A program made the position numbers and the translations under genes. A stretch of 64,000 bases of DNA, taken from positions 62,001 to 126,000 of IMG/VR virus record IMGVR_UViG_3300042545_001134; one strand, 5' to 3'. The number at the start of each line of letters is the position of its first letter. Position 1 is the first letter of the stretch. The notes under the pieces are model-generated. The model made no database searches and was not told where the DNA came from. It was given only the letters and a program-made list of their open reading frames with translations. Below are positions 1,693 to 24,382 of the stretch, piece after piece.

Positions 1693-1894
1693 ATGGTTAA
1701 CCCCATCTTATTATGAATCAACATATTGTGAATGATTCCCTTATTAAAAAATAAAAGGTATTTAGTGAGTGAGAAGTTAATCTCCAGAAAAATTCCATCC
1801 TGTTTATTCAGGATTCACTATGGGCTGTACAACCAGCCCCACCAAAGTTTTACCTCTGATGAAAATATATTGAAGTTTCCAATATTTCAAAGAA
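1693..1894 (-). ncRNA. Structured CRISPR leader / candidate tracrRNA-like RNA
   Basis: Non-coding stretch between promoter and first repeat with hairpins (GGGCTG-GTTGTA-CAGCCC 1822-1839; ATCCTG-AATAAA-CAGGAT 1797-1814) and short segments complementary to the repeat. Confidence 0.45.
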
Positions 1895-1899
1895 CAATA

Positions 1900-1930
1900 C
1901 AAAGATACGTGTATTTTTTAGATATCCAAA
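1900..1930 (-). promoter_or_regulatory. Bacteroidota housekeeping-sigma promoter for leader, array and cas12f
   Basis: Minus strand TTTG-N19-TATCTTTG matches the -33/-7 consensus TTTG / TAnnTTTG. Confidence 0.75.
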
Positions 1931-1951
1931 TTTTTTTTTAAAAATATTTTT

Positions 1952-2044
1952 TTATTCATCATCCTCCAACGAATCACTGTATGTGGGTTTATCCTTTGGG
2001 ACATAGTCCTCATCACAATTATCAATATGGTCCTCGTCGTTCAT
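1952..2044 (-). CDS. Possible 30-aa acidic peptide (MNDEDHIDNCDEDYVPKDKPTYSDSLEDDE)
   Basis: Manually read ORF with A-rich upstream region; too short for the ORF track. Confidence 0.3.
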   Translation of the reverse strand: MNDEDHIDNCDEDYVPKDKPTYSDSLEDDE

Positions 2045-2060
2045 AATAGATTTATTTTAA

Positions 2061-2238
2061 ATAACACCCTGATTTATCCAACTTACAGGTGTCGTGGCTG
2101 TCCCCGTTACCGGGTTAGAAATAGACTTTTGGATAGATAGTCAATCTAAATAGAGCCTTTCCCTATCAGAAGTTCCATATGGTTATCACACCACTTCTCA
2201 TCGTATTGGACATACTATCCGGTGATTAACCGAATCGC
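2061..2238 (-). ncRNA. Unidentified structured RNA, copy 1, directly 3' of tRNA-like element
   Basis: Non-coding, duplicated at 3803-3983; differences between copies keep hairpins and a GNRA loop. Confidence 0.6.
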
Positions 2239-2239
2239 G

Positions 2240-2360
2240 TAGTCAGGACAGGAATCGAACCTATAACCAGTTTTCTAAGCCCTACGTGCAGGATTTTCAC
2301 TGCCTCGTACTGGTGTCTAATCGAGCATACACAGCGTTTAACCAATTCCGCCACCTGACT
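2240..2360 (-). ncRNA. tRNA-like element (121 nt) with expanded, non-canonical centre, copy 1
   Basis: Acceptor AGTCAGG/CCTGACT + discriminator A; Leu/Ser-like D arm TGGCGGAATTGGTTAAACGC; T arm ATAGG-TTCGATT-CCTGT; ~70-nt centre with no 7-nt anticodon loop; no encoded CCA. Confidence 0.7.
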
Positions 2361-2548
2361 ATTAGCGTTCTATTAAAAATGGAAGTTATTGCGCCTATAC
2401 CATTTCGTTGATACCACCAATATGGCGTTCATTTTATTCCATTGTTCAAGTTTTGTGAACATTTTCAAATATAGATTTTTATTCCATCATTGCGCCTATT
2501 TTTCTTGCTTTGCGCCTATTTTTTCCACCATAAGGCTAAAATTAGAAA

Positions 2549-2788
2549 TTATTTTCCAAATGTTTCGTTGTAGTATTGTTGAGAGCCAATTACATATTCA
2601 TCTGAAATGCCAAATTTGTAAGCATTCATTATCTCCTGCTTGTGCATTTCTTTGGCTTCGTCAACATCCACTAAAAAATTATCTATCATTGTTGTTCTAA
2701 CAATTCCATCTGGTTCAGATTCTATTATTAAAATTCTTCGTTTCAATTCAGATATTAACCATTCTATACTGCTTTTTTGTTTTTCCAT
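2549..2788 (-). CDS. Small hypothetical protein, paralogue of 2925-3143
   Basis: Both share A(K)EM-KQ-I-N-Y...YYNETFGK; the last 27 nt of the two genes are identical. Confidence 0.7.
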   Translation of the reverse strand: MEKQKSSIEWLISELKRRILIIESEPDGIVRTTMIDNFLVDVDEAKEMHKQEIMNAYKFGISDEYVIGSQQYYNETFGK

Positions 2789-2924
2789 TTTATTTGTTGT
2801 TTAAATGTTTTCTATTTCTTTTTTAATTCTTCATAAATACCACCTAAAATAATCATTATGATTAGTTGTATAAATGTAGTTACCCAATAATAAGCGTGTT
2901 CCATAAGTTTTTTTGTTATTTAAG

Positions 2925-3143
2925 TTATTTTCCAAATGTTTCGTTGTAGTATTTTTCTGCTGTTTCGTATGGCTTATCTCTAAAATGCCACGATTGATTA
3001 TAGCAATTGATGATTTGTTGCTTCTCCATTTCTTTGGCTTGTAAAAGAATATCTTTATACATTTTCCTTAATTCTTCTGAATCAAAAGATACTAATCCTA
3101 ATAATTTTAATTCAATAAATCTTACTGCTGTTTGTTTTTTCAT
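2925..3143 (-). CDS. Small hypothetical protein, paralogue of 2549-2788
   Basis: MKKQTAVRF...QAKEMEKQQIINCY...YYNETFGK. Confidence 0.7.
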   Translation of the reverse strand: MKKQTAVRFIELKLLGLVSFDSEELRKMYKDILLQAKEMEKQQIINCYNQSWHFRDKPYETAEKYYNETFGK

Positions 3144-3532
3144 TTTGTTTGTTGTTTAAGTTTTACAATCTCAATCAGTTTTTTAATACACTCAAGCTCT
3201 GCTTCTTTATAAGTACCATTAAATTTTAAAGGTTCAGTTCCACATAGTCTATTCCATTTATCATTAATAATTAGATAAGAAAACTCTTGAGTACCAACTT
3301 CAATTAATCCTGTTAATCTATATTCTTCTCTAAACCATCTAAATACTTGTTGGTAAATTGGGGCTTTAATAAGATTCTTTTCTAATAAATTAGAATCAAA
3401 CATTTGTATTAGTATTTCACCAGTTGGCTCTTCCCATTCGGTAACAATACAATATCTACCAAAACAAGGTTCATCAAATCCTAATTCTTTTAAAGCTAAT
3501 GCTTCTTGGTATGGCATAAATTCTTTTTCCAT
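3140..3532 (-). CDS. Hypothetical phage protein (ALALKELGFDEPC type)
   Basis: 130-aa ORF overlapping the next start; A-rich initiation region. Confidence 0.7.
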   Translation of the reverse strand: MEKEFMPYQEALALKELGFDEPCFGRYCIVTEWEEPTGEILIQMFDSNLLEKNLIKAPIYQQVFRWFREEYRLTGLIEVGTQEFSYLIINDKWNRLCGTEPLKFNGTYKEAELECIKKLIEIVKLKQQTK

Positions 3533-3721
3533 TTTGTTTGTTGTTTAAGTTATATAATTTGTTAAATGTTTTTTTGGTGCTTGTTAAATGTTTGTATAAA
3601 TTTTTAGTAACGTTTCATGCACTTTGTCCAGTTAATTCATTAAAAGACTGGACATTACACGCCTTTAAATGCTTAAGCCTATTGGCTTTTGTTAATTGTA
3701 CCTATGGTACTTTGTTAATTG

Positions 3722-3800
3722 TAGTCAGGGCCGGACTCGAACCGGATAAACAACCATTTTATTGGACTTGGGCACCATCCCGCATTACGCCCACCTGACT
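3722..3800 (-). ncRNA. Third tRNA-like element (79 nt), same acceptor stem, different centre
   Basis: AGTCAGG...CCGG-TTCGAGT-CCGG-C-CCTGACT-A; D-like stem GGGC/GCCC; no canonical anticodon arm. Confidence 0.6.
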
Positions 3801-3802
3801 AT

Positions 3803-3983
3803 ATAACACCCTATTTTATCCAACTACAGGTGTTAAGGCTGTCCCTATTGCTAGGTTAGGAATAAACTTATTTAAATTAGATAGTCAATCTAAATAGAAC
3901 CTTGTCCTATTAGCAGTTCCATATGAGGAATCACCTCACTTCTCATCGTATTGGACATACTATCCGGTGATTAACCGAATCGC
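3803..3983 (-). ncRNA. Unidentified structured RNA, copy 2
   Basis: Homologous to 2061-2238; flanked on both sides by tRNA-like elements. Confidence 0.6.
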
Positions 3984-3984
3984 G

Positions 3985-4105
3985 TAGTCAGGACAGGAAT
4001 CGAACCTATAACCAGTTTTCTAAGCCCTACGTGCAGGATTTTCACTGCCTCGTACTGGTGTCTAATCGAGCATACACAGCGTTTAACCAATTCCGCCACC
4101 TGACT
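3985..4105 (-). ncRNA. tRNA-like element (121 nt), copy 2, identical to 2240-2360
   Basis: Exact duplicate. Confidence 0.7.
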
Positions 4106-4526
4106 ATTTTTTCTTATTCTTCTTTAATTCTACCACCTTCTCATACTCCTCAGATTCAATTAAATTATCAATAACCATCTTTTCAAATATGTTTTTGTCA
4201 CTTTCATTATCCGATAATTCGTGATGTGCACCACTTTTGAAAAGTTGGTACATACTTTCAAGTGACTTAGAATCGTTCTTCATTTGATAATTTAATGAAT
4301 AGAGCATTAAAGAGTTTAATAAACCAAACCAAGTATGTTCAGATTCGGTAAATTCGGATTCGTCTTTACCTTTGGATAATATTTTATTCCCAACTTCAAA
4401 GATATCATCAATATCAATTGGAGATTTTAATCTGACATCACTGTTTTCAATCAAATCAATCATAATCTGAGGTATGTGTGTATATTTTTTCATGGCACAA
4501 AGATAATCAATATATTCTAAAAACAA
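4104..4526 (-). CDS. Hypothetical protein (true start probably MKKY at 4493)
   Basis: ORF track; promoter-like TATCTTTG lies just upstream of 4493. Confidence 0.65.
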   Translation of the reverse strand: MFLEYIDYLCAMKKYTHIPQIMIDLIENSDVRLKSPIDIDDIFEVGNKILSKGKDESEFTESEHTWFGLLNSLMLYSLNYQMKNDSKSLESMYQLFKSGAHHELSDNESDKNIFEKMVIDNLIESEEYEKVVELKKNKKK

Positions 4527-4553
4527 AAAAATATTTTTTTGTTCATCAAAATG

Positions 4554-5183
4554 TTACTCGTCGTTTATTTTTAATTCAAATTTTTTAATTTTAAAAAATT
4601 TTTCAAAATATTCCCGTTTAAAGAGCCATCCACGAGTTTTTTTAAGGTTACCACCGGAAACGACGGACCAAATATGTTCTTTGGCAAGGTTTATTATCCT
4701 TATTGGAGTATTAATCCAAATTTCACCAATAAAAACGTATATAGTGATAAAATAATCTGAGGTCGTAGCAATAACTCCAGAATCTTGTTGTATACCATTT
4801 TCATCTTCGCATGAAATTTCTATAAACCCATTACCTGTATCTTTATCGGCAGATAATTGCCTCTCAAAATGTTGCATTTTTAATACCCTTTCATATTTAC
4901 CGGGGTATGCCTTCAAGTCTAATTTTACTTCAAATTTTCTTATTTTCCCATACTTACTGGCAACAATGTCAAATTTCTTTAATTCACCAGTCGGTAAGTT
5001 AGTTCTAAAACATGATATAATAGTCCAACCATAATCAATTAATAGTTGAATAATAATTTTTTCACCAATATCACCAACTCTACTATCTTTACTAAAAGAA
5101 TAATCATTGGGGTATTGTTGCCTTAACCTACCCATTTTATGGATAAAATTATAATCATCTTCGGTTAAGTAAACTTTTTTCAT
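4554..5183 (-). CDS. PD-(D/E)XK nuclease-like protein
   Basis: GDIGEK...FDIVA...KFEVK motif spacing. Confidence 0.55.
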   Translation of the reverse strand: MKKVYLTEDDYNFIHKMGRLRQQYPNDYSFSKDSRVGDIGEKIIIQLLIDYGWTIISCFRTNLPTGELKKFDIVASKYGKIRKFEVKLDLKAYPGKYERVLKMQHFERQLSADKDTGNGFIEISCEDENGIQQDSGVIATTSDYFITIYVFIGEIWINTPIRIINLAKEHIWSVVSGGNLKKTRGWLFKREYFEKFFKIKKFELKINDE

Positions 5184-17473: not shown

Positions 17474-18268
17474 TTAACTTAAAGAGTTAGGTAAGTATAG
17501 TAATGTTGGATTCTTTTTTTGTATATCTAATTCGGGATAGTTCTCTTTGAATTTCATAACATCAAACTTTTTAGTAATTAAGTGATGACCATTCTTAGTT
17601 GGAATAACCGCCTCGAGTTTCGGTCCCACTTTATAACCTATTGGCATACCCGCACTGTCGAACTCAACTTCAGTAATTGGTTTACATTCGTATTCAATAA
17701 ATGCAACCATAAGAGGACTCATTTCTTTTATGTCATCAACATCAATAATCCATCTCTTCTCCTGTGTTTTAATTTGACCAACAACTGAATCAAATAACCC
17801 CTTTTGGTTGTGTTGACCATTCTGAATACGTTGTGCCAAATCAACCATCATGTTTAATGACACATCAAAATGGTTTTGTTTCTGAACGTGGATGTACGCT
17901 CTCGCCTTAAACATCTCACAGAGTTGTTTAATCTCTTCATACCTACGTTCAAGATGTTCGATACTTTCAATACAGTAAGTCTTAATTGTCCTTACCGATT
18001 GGTGATTATCTCTTTCACCTTCGGGTTGGTCTTTCTTACGTTTAAAAACATATAACATGTAGAAGTCCCCACTTTTTTCAAAGTTCAAGAGAGGTCTAAT
18101 TAAATCTATATTGTCCATACTACTTTGTTTATTGTTTGTCATTCTTTTTTCTTTTAACCATTCGTTTAATGATTCACTTGTTTCGTTACTTAACGCATTG
18201 TCAAGTTTTTCTTCGAGTTTGTTTAAGTCTAAGTTGCTCACTATTGTTCCATTGTTGGTTTTAACCAA
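17474..18268 (-). CDS. Hypothetical protein, possible AEP (primase-polymerase) fold
   Basis: WIIDVDD (DxD) and TKNGHH motifs; true start may be internal (MDNIDL). Confidence 0.5.
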   Translation of the reverse strand: MVKTNNGTIVSNLDLNKLEEKLDNALSNETSESLNEWLKEKRMTNNKQSSMDNIDLIRPLLNFEKSGDFYMLYVFKRKKDQPEGERDNHQSVRTIKTYCIESIEHLERRYEEIKQLCEMFKARAYIHVQKQNHFDVSLNMMVDLAQRIQNGQHNQKGLFDSVVGQIKTQEKRWIIDVDDIKEMSPLMVAFIEYECKPITEVEFDSAGMPIGYKVGPKLEAVIPTKNGHHLITKKFDVMKFKENYPELDIQKKNPTLLYLPNSLS

Positions 18269-18975
18269 AGAGTATTATCTTTGAAGATGTAGTTCCTTAA
18301 TGCTGGGTATTCATGTAATGTCTTCAATGTTTTAACGGTATCGTGTTTAAAACATTTGAATAATTCCTCTCTAATTCTTTCAGTTGATACAACACCCATC
18401 TTACCAACATAATCATAATCTTGCATAATACTATCCATCGCCGGTCCTATCCAAAATCCTTTGGTTATACAGAACCTGATTGCTCTCAGAATACGAAGTG
18501 GGTCGTCATCAAATGTATCGGTACATGGTAATGGTGTACGAAGATACCCTCTCTTTAAATCCTCAATCCCATTAAAGTAATCTATGATATTCCCATCACC
18601 GTCTTTTGCCAACGCGTTCAATGTAAAATCCCTACGTTCTAAATCGTCATATAAGGTCCCTGGTTTAACGATAGGTATTCGGGTACCACTTATGTATCCA
18701 ACTTCCTTTCGAGCCATTACGAAGTCTGCAACACCTTGGTAACGGTGTCCCTCAGGGAACCGTGCTCTAATGGTGAAACATGATGGTGTTTCCAAGAATA
18801 TTTCAAACTTTTCAGAGACAAGATAATAGTGTAAAACCGTGAACATATCCTCCGCCTCAGTGTATAAATCCAATAAAGATTGGGTGGGTACTGCAACATA
18901 ATCCACATCTTTAGATGTTAACCCCAAGATTTCGTCCCTTACTTTTCCCCCAACTTCGTAAAATGTAAAACTCAT
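18241..18975 (-). CDS. cca: tRNA nucleotidyltransferase (CCA-adding / poly(A) polymerase family), short form
   Basis: EVGGKVRD, KDVD, DLERRDFTLNA, DDPLRILRAIRF, STERIREEL. Confidence 0.88.
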   Translation of the reverse strand: MSFTFYEVGGKVRDEILGLTSKDVDYVAVPTQSLLDLYTEAEDMFTVLHYYLVSEKFEIFLETPSCFTIRARFPEGHRYQGVADFVMARKEVGYISGTRIPIVKPGTLYDDLERRDFTLNALAKDGDGNIIDYFNGIEDLKRGYLRTPLPCTDTFDDDPLRILRAIRFCITKGFWIGPAMDSIMQDYDYVGKMGVVSTERIREELFKCFKHDTVKTLKTLHEYPALRNYIFKDNTLWLKPTMEQ

Positions 18976-23564: not shown

Positions 23565-24191
23565 TTAATAGTTCTTTCTTAATAATTCAATTACGTCCCA
23601 CGCATCCTCAAGTGCATTGTGCGTAACAATACCTTCAATGTTGGCTCGTTCTTTACATTTAGTTAGTGAGGGAATTGCCTCATCATTTGACCAATCAACA
23701 AATAAAATTGATGGGTCGATTATTCTCGAACGAGTTCTTATTAATTTCTTCCACCACGGCAACTCTTCTAAGAATAACTTGTCAAAGGTACCAAAGTTCT
23801 TTCCGGCAACATTGATTGTAATTGGTTTAGTTTGTCCATTAATTACCAGTATAAAACCATCCCCATACCCATTATTGATTAAGAAATAATAGAATTCTTT
23901 TACAACTTCATCTTCAGTATAAAATTTATATCCACTATTATTATTTAATAGTTCTCTAACTTCATCTTTACCCTCAAGATATTCACCCATCATAGAGATA
24001 ATGTTACTATTCATAGTGATTGCTCTTGGTGAACCTTGAATATTGTTTTGAATTACTATTGCGTTGAACTTGGGTAGTTCCTCGTAAGGTAATTTCTTAG
24101 TGGTGTCTTCGATGATTGCACCGATAGATAGGACATTGTTCATATCAGGATTTAAACCTGATGTTTCGATATCAATTGATACATATAACAT
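23565..24191 (-). CDS. DEDDh 3'-5' exonuclease
   Basis: IDIETSG, GKNFGTFD, HNALEDA. Confidence 0.88.
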   Translation of the reverse strand: MLYVSIDIETSGLNPDMNNVLSIGAIIEDTTKKLPYEELPKFNAIVIQNNIQGSPRAITMNSNIISMMGEYLEGKDEVRELLNNNSGYKFYTEDEVVKEFYYFLINNGYGDGFILVINGQTKPITINVAGKNFGTFDKLFLEELPWWKKLIRTRSRIIDPSILFVDWSNDEAIPSLTKCKERANIEGIVTHNALEDAWDVIELLRKNY

Positions 24192-24382
24192 TAGTCTAAG
24201 GATTTAATTATCATTACGAATATGATGAATAGAATAATGAGCGCAAAACCACCCCACAAAGGTGCGGTTACCCACCACCAAGACCAATCAATAAAACCCG
24301 TAAGTTTAAGGGTCATGAAAATTAAAAACATCAGTCCGAAGAAACCTATCCCCCCTGATGAACTTGAATTACTGTTCGACAT
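24191..24382 (-). CDS. Small membrane protein
   Basis: LKLTGFIDWSWWWVTAPLW. Confidence 0.65.
   Translation of the reverse strand: MSNSNSSSSGGIGFFGLMFLIFMTLKLTGFIDWSWWWVTAPLWGGFALIILFIIFVMIIKSLD

What the first reader, a model, noticed from the sequence alone, without database searches (positions are those of the whole stretch)
2240..4105. Family of anticodon-less tRNA mimics sharing one acceptor stem
Seen: three elements (2240-2360, 3722-3800, 3985-4105) share AGUCAGG/CCUGACU-A and a TTCGA T-loop, but their centres are unrelated and none has a canonical anticodon arm. The 121-nt form has a GUGU/ACAC hairpin with a 12-nt loop and a branched ACCAGU/ACUGGU arm. No CCA is encoded, but a CCA-adding enzyme gene is at 18241. 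The invariant loop UUGACUA of the neighbouring RNA can pair with UAGUCAG at the element 5' end, hinting at a switch. Inference: RNase P/Z processing signals, decoys for tRNA-targeting defence nucleases, or aminoacylated non-decoding RNAs.
Basis: partly seen in the sequence, partly recalled or inferred. Interest (0 to 1): 0.75.

Follow-up and report, generated by a model that had tools for sequence, protein, structure and literature searches.

The report
Phage family of anticodon-less tRNA-like RNAs
The three elements are real minus-strand genes for non-decoding tRNA look-alikes from a large, apparently undescribed family in lake and marine phages, and they most likely act as built-in cutting and stabilising signals for neighbouring RNAs.

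Summary
A (2360->2240) and C (4105->3985) are identical 121-nt copies. B (3800->3722) is 79 nt. A fourth copy (128 nt) sits in the phage's tRNA array outside the window.

Each keeps a tRNA top half: acceptor stem AGUCAGG/CCUGACU, discriminator A, D-loop GG and T-arm. A, C and D have a tRNA-Leu-type D-arm. None has a canonical anticodon arm.

They belong to a large phage-borne family. More than 120 viral contigs carry the main type and 64 carry the B type. Centres of 16-130 nt are almost all unrelated to each other. No sampled host tRNA uses this acceptor stem.

Elements share the flanking bases of the phage's real tRNAs (U-1, C74). They point the same way as neighbouring genes in 130 of 140 cases and are packed between ORFs, real tRNAs and other small RNAs. 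Real tRNAs take their place beside the same neighbour RNA in related phages. They are found in lake metatranscriptomes.

Best reading: phage counterparts of plant-mitochondrial t-elements, meaning RNase P/Z processing and stability modules, possibly also natural tRNA scaffolds for variable cargo. The intron, guide and loop-switch ideas failed. Processing itself is untested.

The parts
2240..2360 (-). Element A: 121-nt tRNA-like RNA with acceptor AGUCAGG/CCUGACU, A73, Leu-type D-arm and T-arm GGUUCGAUUCC. Its 69-nt centre replaces the anticodon and variable arms (GUGU/ACAC hairpin plus a long CCAGU/ACUGG arm).
   Evidence: Rfam tRNA 37.3 bits, skipping 59 nt of centre. Model R1 56 bits. The frame-constrained fold is -32.1 kcal/mol against -33.3 unconstrained, and the centre's z-score is -0.14.
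3985..4105 (-). Element C: an identical second copy of element A. Its first two bases together with the preceding T form the TAG stop of the upstream 140-aa ORF.
   Evidence: Sequence identical to A. R1 56 bits. ORF 4104-4526 ends here.
3722..3800 (-). Element B: 79-nt B-type tRNA-like RNA. It has the same acceptor stem and A73, the segment GGGCGUAAUG after U8, a D-like hairpin with a GG loop, a short CCA/UGG hairpin and a 4-bp T-stem.
   Evidence: R1 50.6 bits. The B-type 5' 18-mer occurs in 64 viral contigs, giving 35 unique members. Three helices covary in alignment A4.
2051..2239 (-). Neighbour RNA, copy 1: a conserved, pseudoknotted structured RNA directly downstream of element A, followed by an A-rich leader and a 30-codon ORF.
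   Evidence: nhmmer E 1.8e-64. 21 of 31 pairs are compensated in a 10-sequence alignment. Internal pseudoknot loop GACU with AGUC. An RNA-library contig covers 2012-2234 with 1 mismatch.
3801..3984 (-). Neighbour RNA, copy 2: lies exactly between element C and element B.
   Evidence: In relatives the same RNA is flanked by real tRNAs (L131) or preceded by a promoter (L140).
4104..4526 (-). Upstream 140-aa ORF of unknown function whose stop codon overlaps the 5' edge of element C.
   Evidence: no Pfam match. Across the family this overlap is not enriched over random TAG triplets.
2466..2473 (-). Candidate Bacteroidota-type -7 promoter box (TATATTTG) about 105 nt upstream of element A. This is an inference only.
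   Evidence: Read from the sequence. TAnnTTTG lies directly upstream of some family members.
18241..18975 (-). Phage nucleotidyltransferase of the CCA-adding/poly(A) polymerase family, a candidate for completing the 3' ends of tRNAs and elements that encode only C74.
   Evidence: PF01743 E 5.4e-17 and a genome search hit. Its activity on the elements is untested.

Best explanation
What they are: the elements are minus-strand genes for non-decoding tRNA-like RNAs. The main type (A, C, D) appears derived from a phage tRNA-Leu-type gene; the origin of the B type is less clear. They keep the half of a tRNA that maturation enzymes read. That half comprises the acceptor stem with U-1, A73 and C74, and the D-loop/T-loop elbow. 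The decoding half is replaced by arbitrary inserts.

How they most likely work: they are transcribed within polycistronic units. The host's RNase P cuts at their 5' edge. The 3' tRNA-processing machinery (RNase Z or exonucleases) cuts at their 3' edge, and a CCA-adding enzyme, possibly the phage's own, then finishes that end. This releases precisely ended neighbours, both mRNAs with a leader of about 15 nt and small structured RNAs such as the 185-nt neighbour RNA, and leaves a stable tRNA-shaped RNA.

They are therefore a phage counterpart of plant-mitochondrial t-elements and of mitochondrial tRNA punctuation. Some centres may in addition be functional cargo carried on a natural tRNA scaffold.

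Shown: strand, fold frame, family membership, genomic context, presence in RNA libraries.
Inferred: the cleavages, CCA addition, and the stabilising role.
For: Frame:
- Rfam tRNA and model R1 hit only the minus strand.
- U8, A14, G18G19 and the T-loop are conserved. D- and T-stems show compensated changes.
- The best non-member hit of R1 is the phage's own tRNA-Leu. The 5' part hits annotated tRNA-Leu genes.

Non-decoding:
- ARAGORN of 128 elements, with scattered anticodons.
- Some centres are only a tetraloop hairpin. B-type loops range from 5-13 nt up to 60-nt inserts.

Processing context:
- The phage's real tRNAs have the same U-1 and C74.
- Element D sits in the tRNA array, 4 and 10 nt from real tRNAs.
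- The same neighbour RNA is flanked by elements in some phages and by real tRNAs in others (X24 loose end at 3982).
- 130 of 140 nearest genes are co-oriented.
- 39% of elements have an ORF ending within 40 nt upstream. 29 of 101 have a start codon 10-30 nt downstream, against 51 of 505 random positions, p = 4e-6.

Expression: lake metatranscriptome contigs cover the elements, other family members and the neighbour RNA, but not the intervening ORFs.

Precedent: t-elements (PMC1920247) and the engineered tRNA scaffold (PMC3753655).
Against: - No transcript ends could be read. The RNA runs are assembled contigs and could contain DNA.
- A pure processing signal does not explain why the 7-bp acceptor sequence is nearly invariant, while ordinary phage tRNAs with the same T-arm have many different acceptor stems.
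- It does not explain why no sampled host tRNA shares this acceptor.
- It does not explain why some centre subfamilies keep helices through compensatory changes.
- 55 of 146 elements have neither an ORF nor a tRNA within 40 nt.
- Where the element supplies the upstream stop codon, RNase P cleavage would produce a non-stop mRNA.
Confidence: 0.5

Rival explanations
1. Natural tRNA scaffold with functional cargo. The constant frame only provides processing and nuclease resistance. The variable centre (and the D-loop insert in some members) is the working part, for example a protein-binding aptamer, regulator or anti-defence RNA. This overlaps with the best explanation rather than excluding it.
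For: - The architecture equals the engineered scaffold: acceptor, T- and D-arms kept, anticodon arm replaced.
- 106 of 114 centres are mutually unrelated.
- Subfamilies with homologous centres keep helices by compensated changes.
- Inserts are tolerated at two sites, the centre and the D-loop.
- The B type has a conserved stem with a variable loop or large insert.
Against: - Centres are on average barely more stable than shuffles: mean z -0.5, and -0.14 for the window's 121-nt form.
- There is no shared motif, no Rfam family, and no match to other phage DNA beyond shuffled controls.
- Some centres are only 16-20 nt.
Confidence: 0.25
2. Leucylated non-decoding RNAs. Host LeuRS charges them because it reads A73 and the elbow rather than the anticodon. 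They then serve as amino-acid donors or titrate LeuRS or EF-Tu.
For: - The main type keeps A73 (106 of 117), a regular acceptor helix, U8-A14, G18G19 and a Leu-type D-arm.
- For a bacterial LeuRS these are the critical elements, and deleting the anticodon stem-loop costs only 2.5-fold in affinity (PMC2377443).
Against: - The B type shares the acceptor stem but lacks the Leu D-arm.
- The discriminator is G, U or C in 24 of 192 members, and A73G lowers leucylation 143-fold.
- The phage has no LeuRS of its own.
Confidence: 0.1
3. Decoys or inhibitors for host factors that recognise tRNA shape, such as tRNA-targeting defence nucleases or toxins. The private acceptor stem and missing anticodon loop would make them uncleavable binders.
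For: - Multiple copies per genome.
- Presence in RNA libraries.
- The acceptor stem is absent from sampled host tRNAs.
- Diversity of the sort expected under an arms race.
Against: - No defence or counter-defence gene is linked; no protein family is in more than 16 of 133 loci.
- Most known phage-relevant tRNA nucleases cut anticodon loops, which these RNAs lack (established knowledge).
- The idea does not explain the tight positioning at gene borders.
Confidence: 0.07
4. DNA-level boundary or recombination sequences. The invariant 25-nt ends act as homology patches or recombinase sites that shuffle gene cassettes between phages, and the tRNA likeness is ancestral baggage.
For: - Both ends are near-invariant across very different phages.
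- Elements sit at gene borders.
- In relative L140, 95% identity stops exactly at an element junction.
Against: - Elbow nucleotides and stems are kept by compensated changes, which is RNA-level selection.
- Elements are strongly co-oriented with genes and present in RNA libraries.
- Only one mosaic breakpoint was examined.
- No recombinase is linked.
Confidence: 0.05
5. Decoding tRNAs after all, either carrying small introns or with unusual enlarged anticodon arms (for example suppressors).
For:
- Leu is the commonest forced label, 16 of 74.
- One AGTCAGG member (L067, 71 nt) scores 66 bits as a tRNA.
Against: - The forced calls span 21 amino acids plus Stop and SeC. Intron positions run from 30 to 39 and lengths from 2 to 78 nt.
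- The proposed anticodon stems are weak and G-U-rich.
- The phage already has tRNAs for all 20 amino acids and no RtcB ligase.
- Known bacterial tRNA introns are self-splicing group I introns of over 200 nt (established knowledge).
Confidence: 0.03

Closest known systems
Plant-mitochondrial t-elements (tRNA-like processing signals; PMC1920247)
   Same: Both are non-canonical cloverleaves with a conserved GGTTCRANYCC T-arm, placed at mRNA borders. t-elements are cut by RNase P and RNase Z, gain untemplated C/A at the 3' end, and persist as small stable RNAs. Some abut or overlap ORF ends.
   Different: t-elements occur as a few dispersed copies in organelle genomes and have no shared acceptor sequence. 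Here there are hundreds of phage copies with one private acceptor stem, most with a Leu-type D-arm and with inserts of up to 130 nt. There is no homology and no cleavage data.
Engineered tRNA scaffold for recombinant RNA (Ponchon and Dardel; PMC3753655)
   Same: The same design: acceptor stem, T-arm and D-arm kept, and the anticodon stem-loop replaced by an arbitrary RNA. The chimera is processed and stabilised by the cell's tRNA machinery.
   Different: The scaffold is man-made. Whether the natural centres are functional cargo is unknown.
Mitochondrial tRNA punctuation, and viral or cellular tRNA-like processing units (MHV68 TMERs, MALAT1 mascRNA; from my own knowledge)
   Same: tRNA or tRNA-like units inside longer transcripts direct RNase P/Z cuts that mature the neighbouring RNAs.
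   Different: Those are eukaryotic or organellar systems, and punctuating tRNAs are real decoders. No bacterial-virus family of dedicated non-decoding units was found in the literature searched.
Canonical phage tRNA-Leu (type II tRNA, Rfam RF00005)
   Same: 7-bp acceptor stem, A73, U8, D-arm GCGG-AAUUGGU-A-CGC with G18G19, and T-arm. Located in or near tRNA arrays. Same U-1 and C74 flanks.
   Different: No 5-bp/7-nt anticodon arm and no coherent anticodon. Rfam scores are 31-50 bits against 50-77 for neighbouring real tRNAs.
Other non-decoding tRNA mimics: the tmRNA tRNA-like domain, bacterial Y RNA YrlA (PMC4201824), B. cereus tRNA-Other
   Same: tRNA-shaped RNAs that use the elbow or acceptor for non-decoding roles. 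Some are phage-encoded.
   Different: There is no tag ORF or pseudoknot ring (tmRNA). In YrlA the 5' and 3' ends form a Ro-binding stem, which is not the case here. No Rfam hit to either family.

Membership tests
Canonical tRNA (RF00005) | 7-bp acceptor stem, D-arm with G18G19, and T-arm with a GTTCRANYC loop | tested here: met
   Rfam 37.3 bits against a cut-off of 29 for A. R1 alignment. Conservation tables.
Canonical tRNA (RF00005) | Anticodon arm with a 5-bp stem and a 7-nt loop containing U33 and a coherent anticodon | tested here: not met
   ARAGORN finds no tRNA in the window. 26 of 128 family members are called, with scattered labels. Rfam skips 59 nt of centre.
Intron-containing tRNA | Removing one insert gives a standard cloverleaf with an identity that is consistent across homologues | tested here: not met
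   Forced calls give 21 amino-acid labels, with variable intron positions and lengths. The proposed stems are weak.
t-element-type processing signal | tRNA-like fold with a conserved T-arm but a non-canonical remainder, lying at the borders of other RNAs | tested here: met
t-element-type processing signal | RNA termini coincide with element borders, with RNase P/Z cleavage and untemplated C/A at the 3' end | not testable with these tools
   Only assembled contigs of RNA runs were available, and no ends were reported.
tRNA-Leu identity set for bacterial LeuRS | A73, a regular acceptor helix, and the U8-A14, G18-U55, G19-C56 core | tested here: met
   Present in A/C and most main-type members; criteria taken from PMC2377443. 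The B type lacks the Leu D-arm, and 24 of 192 members lack A73.
tRNA-Leu identity set for bacterial LeuRS | Correctly oriented long variable arm, and actual leucylation | not testable with these tools
   The centres are too diverse to infer arm orientation, and no charging data exist.
tmRNA | tRNA-like ends enclosing a tag reading frame and pseudoknots | tested here: not met
   ARAGORN and Rfam find the phage's real tmRNA elsewhere (genome 6451-6857) and none at the elements.
Bacterial Y RNA (YrlA) | 5' and 3' ends form a Ro60-binding stem with an internal tRNA-like module; Rfam model match | tested here: not met
   No Rfam match. Here the RNA ends form the acceptor stem itself.

The most novel reading that the evidence does not exclude
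Phages of Bacteroidota carry a plug-in small-RNA platform. A private, non-decoding, tRNA-Leu-derived chassis is read by host tRNA-maturation enzymes but is, on this reading, kept away from translation by its unique acceptor stem. It expresses and stabilises a fast-evolving repertoire of RNA modules, such as aptamers, regulators or anti-defence RNAs. This would be a natural tRNA scaffold discovered after the engineered one.
Probability: 0.25. Interest if true: 0.85.

Novelty: new variant of a known kind. Interest (0 to 1): 0.72.

Why it matters
- **Annotation.** tRNA finders label about a fifth of these elements as tRNAs with odd anticodons, and with introns allowed more than half. That would corrupt inferences about phage codon supply, suppressor tRNAs and recoding.
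- **Gene expression.** If processing is confirmed, many aquatic phages would use tRNA-like punctuation to mature mRNAs and small RNAs. That strategy is so far known from organelles and eukaryotic viruses.
- **Discovery handle.** The elements flag unknown structured phage RNAs. The 185-nt pseudoknotted RNA and at least two further conserved small RNAs were found simply by looking next to them.
- **Open question made testable.** The invariant private acceptor stem and the hypervariable inserts raise the question of what reads that stem and whether the inserts are cargo.

Tried and rejected
- **Intron-containing tRNA:** forced cloverleaves are incoherent across the family.
- **Guide or spacer role:** no matches to held phage DNA or to this phage's own genome beyond shuffled controls, and no shared motif.
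- **Obligate linked protein partner:** no ORF family is in more than 16 of 133 loci, and the top ones are terminase or unknowns.
- **Switch between the neighbour RNA's loop and the element's 5' end:** the loop covaries with an internal partner, and the acceptor stays constant where the loop changes.
- **Element supplying the upstream TAG stop as a design feature:** not enriched, 4.6% against 3.8% for random TAG.
- **8-bp acceptor stem using -1:73:** only suggestive, 85% paired against 82% in shuffles.
- **Mimicry of a host tRNA acceptor:** not found in 151 sampled genomes of the candidate host order.
- **Known RNA family for centres or neighbours:** Rfam gives only tRNA, tmRNA and one group I intron.
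- **Cultured, annotated phage carrying the element:** none in 50,697 records.
- **Docking on the phage CCA-adding enzyme:** the tool did not fold protein-RNA pairs, so this is no evidence either way.
- **Published description:** seven literature searches found none, nor did the papers read from them.
- **Tool oddities:** Rfam in E-value mode on 1800-4600 did not list the tRNA hit that gathering mode gives, and gathering mode lists only one of the two identical copies.
Full report
**Setting.** The window is bases 62001-126000 of a 310,691-bp phage record from IMG/VR, estimated 93% complete. All ORFs around the finding are on the minus strand. The genome has 25 canonical tRNAs covering all 20 amino acids, plus a tmRNA, clustered at the ends of the record.

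**Checking the observation.**
- AGTCAGG-N(40-140)-CCTGACTA occurs four times in the genome and never for the reversed control pattern.
- The RNA strand is minus. Rfam's tRNA model hits 2360->2240 at 37.3 bits (cut-off 29) by aligning acceptor, D-arm and T-arm and skipping 59 nt of centre. The T-loop reads GGUUCGAUUCC only on that strand.
- A (2360->2240) and C (4105->3985) are identical. B (3800->3722) is different. A fourth copy, D (128 nt), lies at genome 307917-308044, 4 nt after tRNA-Leu(UAG) and 10 nt before tRNA-Tyr.
- Default ARAGORN finds no tRNA in the window.
- No CCA is encoded; only a C follows the discriminator.
- ORF 18241-18975 has the CCA-adding/poly(A) polymerase head domain.

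**A large family.**
93 of the 133 viral loci then held yielded 128 elements (117 unique) with matching 3' ends.
- The same scan of about 600 Gb of cellular genomes also capped at 120. Only four of those hits were real elements, and the two whose titles were listed are on Bacteroidota MAG contigs, Sediminibacterium and Flavobacterium.
- Members are 70-181 nt, median 106. The T-stem ACAGG/CCUGU, which my filter did not force, is present in 84 of 117, with rare compensated variants. The discriminator is A in 106 of 117.
- A covariance model of the frame finds exactly four members in this genome (50-58 bits). The next-best hit is the phage's own tRNA-Leu(UAA) at 46 bits.
- The 5' part alone matches annotated tRNA-Leu genes of cultured phages, but no cultured phage has the whole element.
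- A scan anchored only on the T-arm shows the same T-arm on ordinary phage tRNAs with many different acceptor stems. Among uncalled tRNA-likes AGUCAGG dominates. One member (L276) has another acceptor stem with the same Leu-type D-arm and a centre of about 100 nt.
- No tRNA-sized sequence with this acceptor stem occurs in 151 sampled genomes of the candidate host order. The stem is therefore private to the phage elements.

**The window's B element represents a second, more uniform type.** Its 5' 18-mer occurs in 64 viral contigs, giving 35 unique members of 76-133 nt. RNAalifold on 26 members supports:
- a D-like hairpin, where 16 of 26 sequences carry a compensated change at one pair;
- a CCN/NGG hairpin whose loop ranges from about 5 to 13 nt, or carries a 40-60-nt insert;
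- a 4-bp T-stem.

The 121-nt type is found only in the window's near-twin, L132.

**Not decoders.**
- ARAGORN accepts 26 of 128 elements, with labels from Cys to Tyr(AUA) and 4-base 'anticodons'.
- Some centres are nothing but a tetraloop hairpin.
- With introns allowed, 74 of 117 are 'rescued', but as 21 different amino acids plus Stop and SeC. Intron positions run from 30 to 39 and lengths from 2 to 78 nt.
- A few members may still be close to real tRNAs. L067 (71 nt) scores 66 bits, and Leu is the commonest forced label.

**The centres.**
- 106 of 114 are mutually unrelated and share no enriched motif.
- They are only slightly more stable than shuffles: mean z -0.5, and -0.14 for the window's 121-nt form.
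- They match nothing else in the phage DNA I hold beyond shuffled controls, and no Rfam family.
- Small groups with homologous centres do keep helices through compensated changes.
- Some members, including D, carry an extra hairpin inside the D-loop.

**Context.**
- The base before the element is T in 100 of 117 unique elements. In the larger set the base after the discriminator is C in 187 of 192. The phage's genuine tRNAs have the same flanks.
- Elements are co-oriented with the nearest gene in 130 of 140 cases.
- 39% have a same-strand ORF ending within 40 nt upstream, 30% have an ORF starting within 40 nt downstream, and 13% have both.
- Start codons peak 12-22 nt downstream: 29 of 101 fall within 10-30 nt, against 51 of 505 random positions, p = 4e-6.
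- The remaining elements lie beside other small structured RNAs.
- The 185-nt neighbour RNA, present twice in the window, is flanked by elements here and in L130. It is flanked by real tRNAs in L131 and in an RNA contig of run X24, and preceded by a promoter in L140. Elements and tRNAs are therefore interchangeable in that position.
- No protein family is linked. The phage has no LeuRS and no RtcB.

**Expression.** Four lake metatranscriptomes hold contigs that match only the constant ends and carry at least seven other centres. They also hold near-identical contigs of the neighbour RNA (2012-2234), element B (3719-3800) and the 121-nt element (3996-4085). The ORFs in between are essentially uncovered. 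These are assembled contigs, and DNA carry-over cannot be excluded, so no transcript ends can be read.

**Neighbour RNA and the 'switch'.** This RNA is genuinely structured, with 21 of 31 pairs compensated. Its invariant loop GACU pairs with AGUC just upstream of UAUUCCUAAC inside the same RNA. L096 has GAUC with GAUC. L034 has AACU with AGUU while its flanking elements keep AGUCAGG. That supports an internal pseudoknot and not pairing with the element's 5' end.

**Interpretation.** What is kept is the part of a tRNA that RNase P, 3'-end processing, the CCA-adding enzyme and elbow-binding factors read. What is lost is the part the ribosome reads. Taken together with the tRNA-type flanks, the interchangeability with real tRNAs and the border positions, the best reading is a phage version of plant-mitochondrial t-elements (PMC1920247), and more broadly of tRNA punctuation.

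The design also equals the engineered tRNA scaffold (PMC3753655), so some centres may be cargo.

Leucylation is chemically plausible for the main type, because LeuRS needs A73 and the elbow rather than the anticodon arm (PMC2377443). It is unlikely to be the unifying function, since the B type lacks the Leu D-arm and the discriminator varies.

The near-invariant private acceptor stem is unexplained by any of these readings. It is the most interesting loose end.

**Novelty.** Seven literature searches, and the three candidate papers I read from them, turned up no description of this family. The library lacks most subscription journals, so earlier description cannot be excluded.

Noticed in passing
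window 2051-2239 (-) and 3801-3984 (-); relatives L130, L131, L034, L035, L114, L096, L139, L140: A conserved RNA of about 185-215 nt with long invariant single-stranded blocks, GNRA-capped helices and a covariation-supported pseudoknot (loop GACU with AGUC). It has no Rfam match and is usually excised-looking, sitting between tRNAs or tRNA-like elements. Function unknown.
   Followed up: partly
window 2389-2398, 2490-2499, 2510-2519 (+ strand TTGCGCCTAT): Three exact copies of a 10-mer in the non-coding stretch upstream (minus-strand sense) of element A. This may be a regulator binding site near the candidate promoter.
   Followed up: no
window about 2789-2810, 3144-3163, 3533-3552 (minus-strand gene starts): Three consecutive small minus-strand ORFs share an almost identical leader, AACAACAAACAAA-ATG. 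It is A-rich with no Shine-Dalgarno sequence, as expected for a Bacteroidota host.
   Followed up: no
L294, L312, L330, L341, L285, L321 (other viral contigs): A separate 49-51-nt class made only of a 7-bp acceptor stem (ACGCACG/CGTGCGT or a variant), a 17-nt linker and a T-arm. This is a minimal 'top-half-only' tRNA-like element.
   Followed up: no
L019 and L061 (between elements); L009, L033, L049, L058, L027 (just upstream of elements): At least two more conserved small RNAs recur next to elements. One begins CCUAGCCUUUGUUUGGGGCAAGCGCUCG. The other ends in a GCUCG-GAAA-GACGAGC hairpin.
   Followed up: no
L276 (viral contig): A 158-nt member with the same Leu-type D-arm and T-arm but a different acceptor stem (GUAGAUG/CAUCUAC). 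This shows the design is not strictly tied to AGUCAGG.
   Followed up: no
genome 6451-6857 (+), outside the window: The phage encodes its own tmRNA (tag GNVYNNMEVAGLLATSKVAA by ARAGORN) alongside its 25 tRNAs.
   Followed up: no
window 24139-24227 (-): A weak hit of the element model (15 bits, E 0.13), probably noise.
   Followed up: no
L140 against window 3715-3982: 95% identity between the two phages ends exactly at the junction of the neighbour RNA and element C, and the upstream sequences are unrelated. This is a mosaic breakpoint at an element border.
   Followed up: partly
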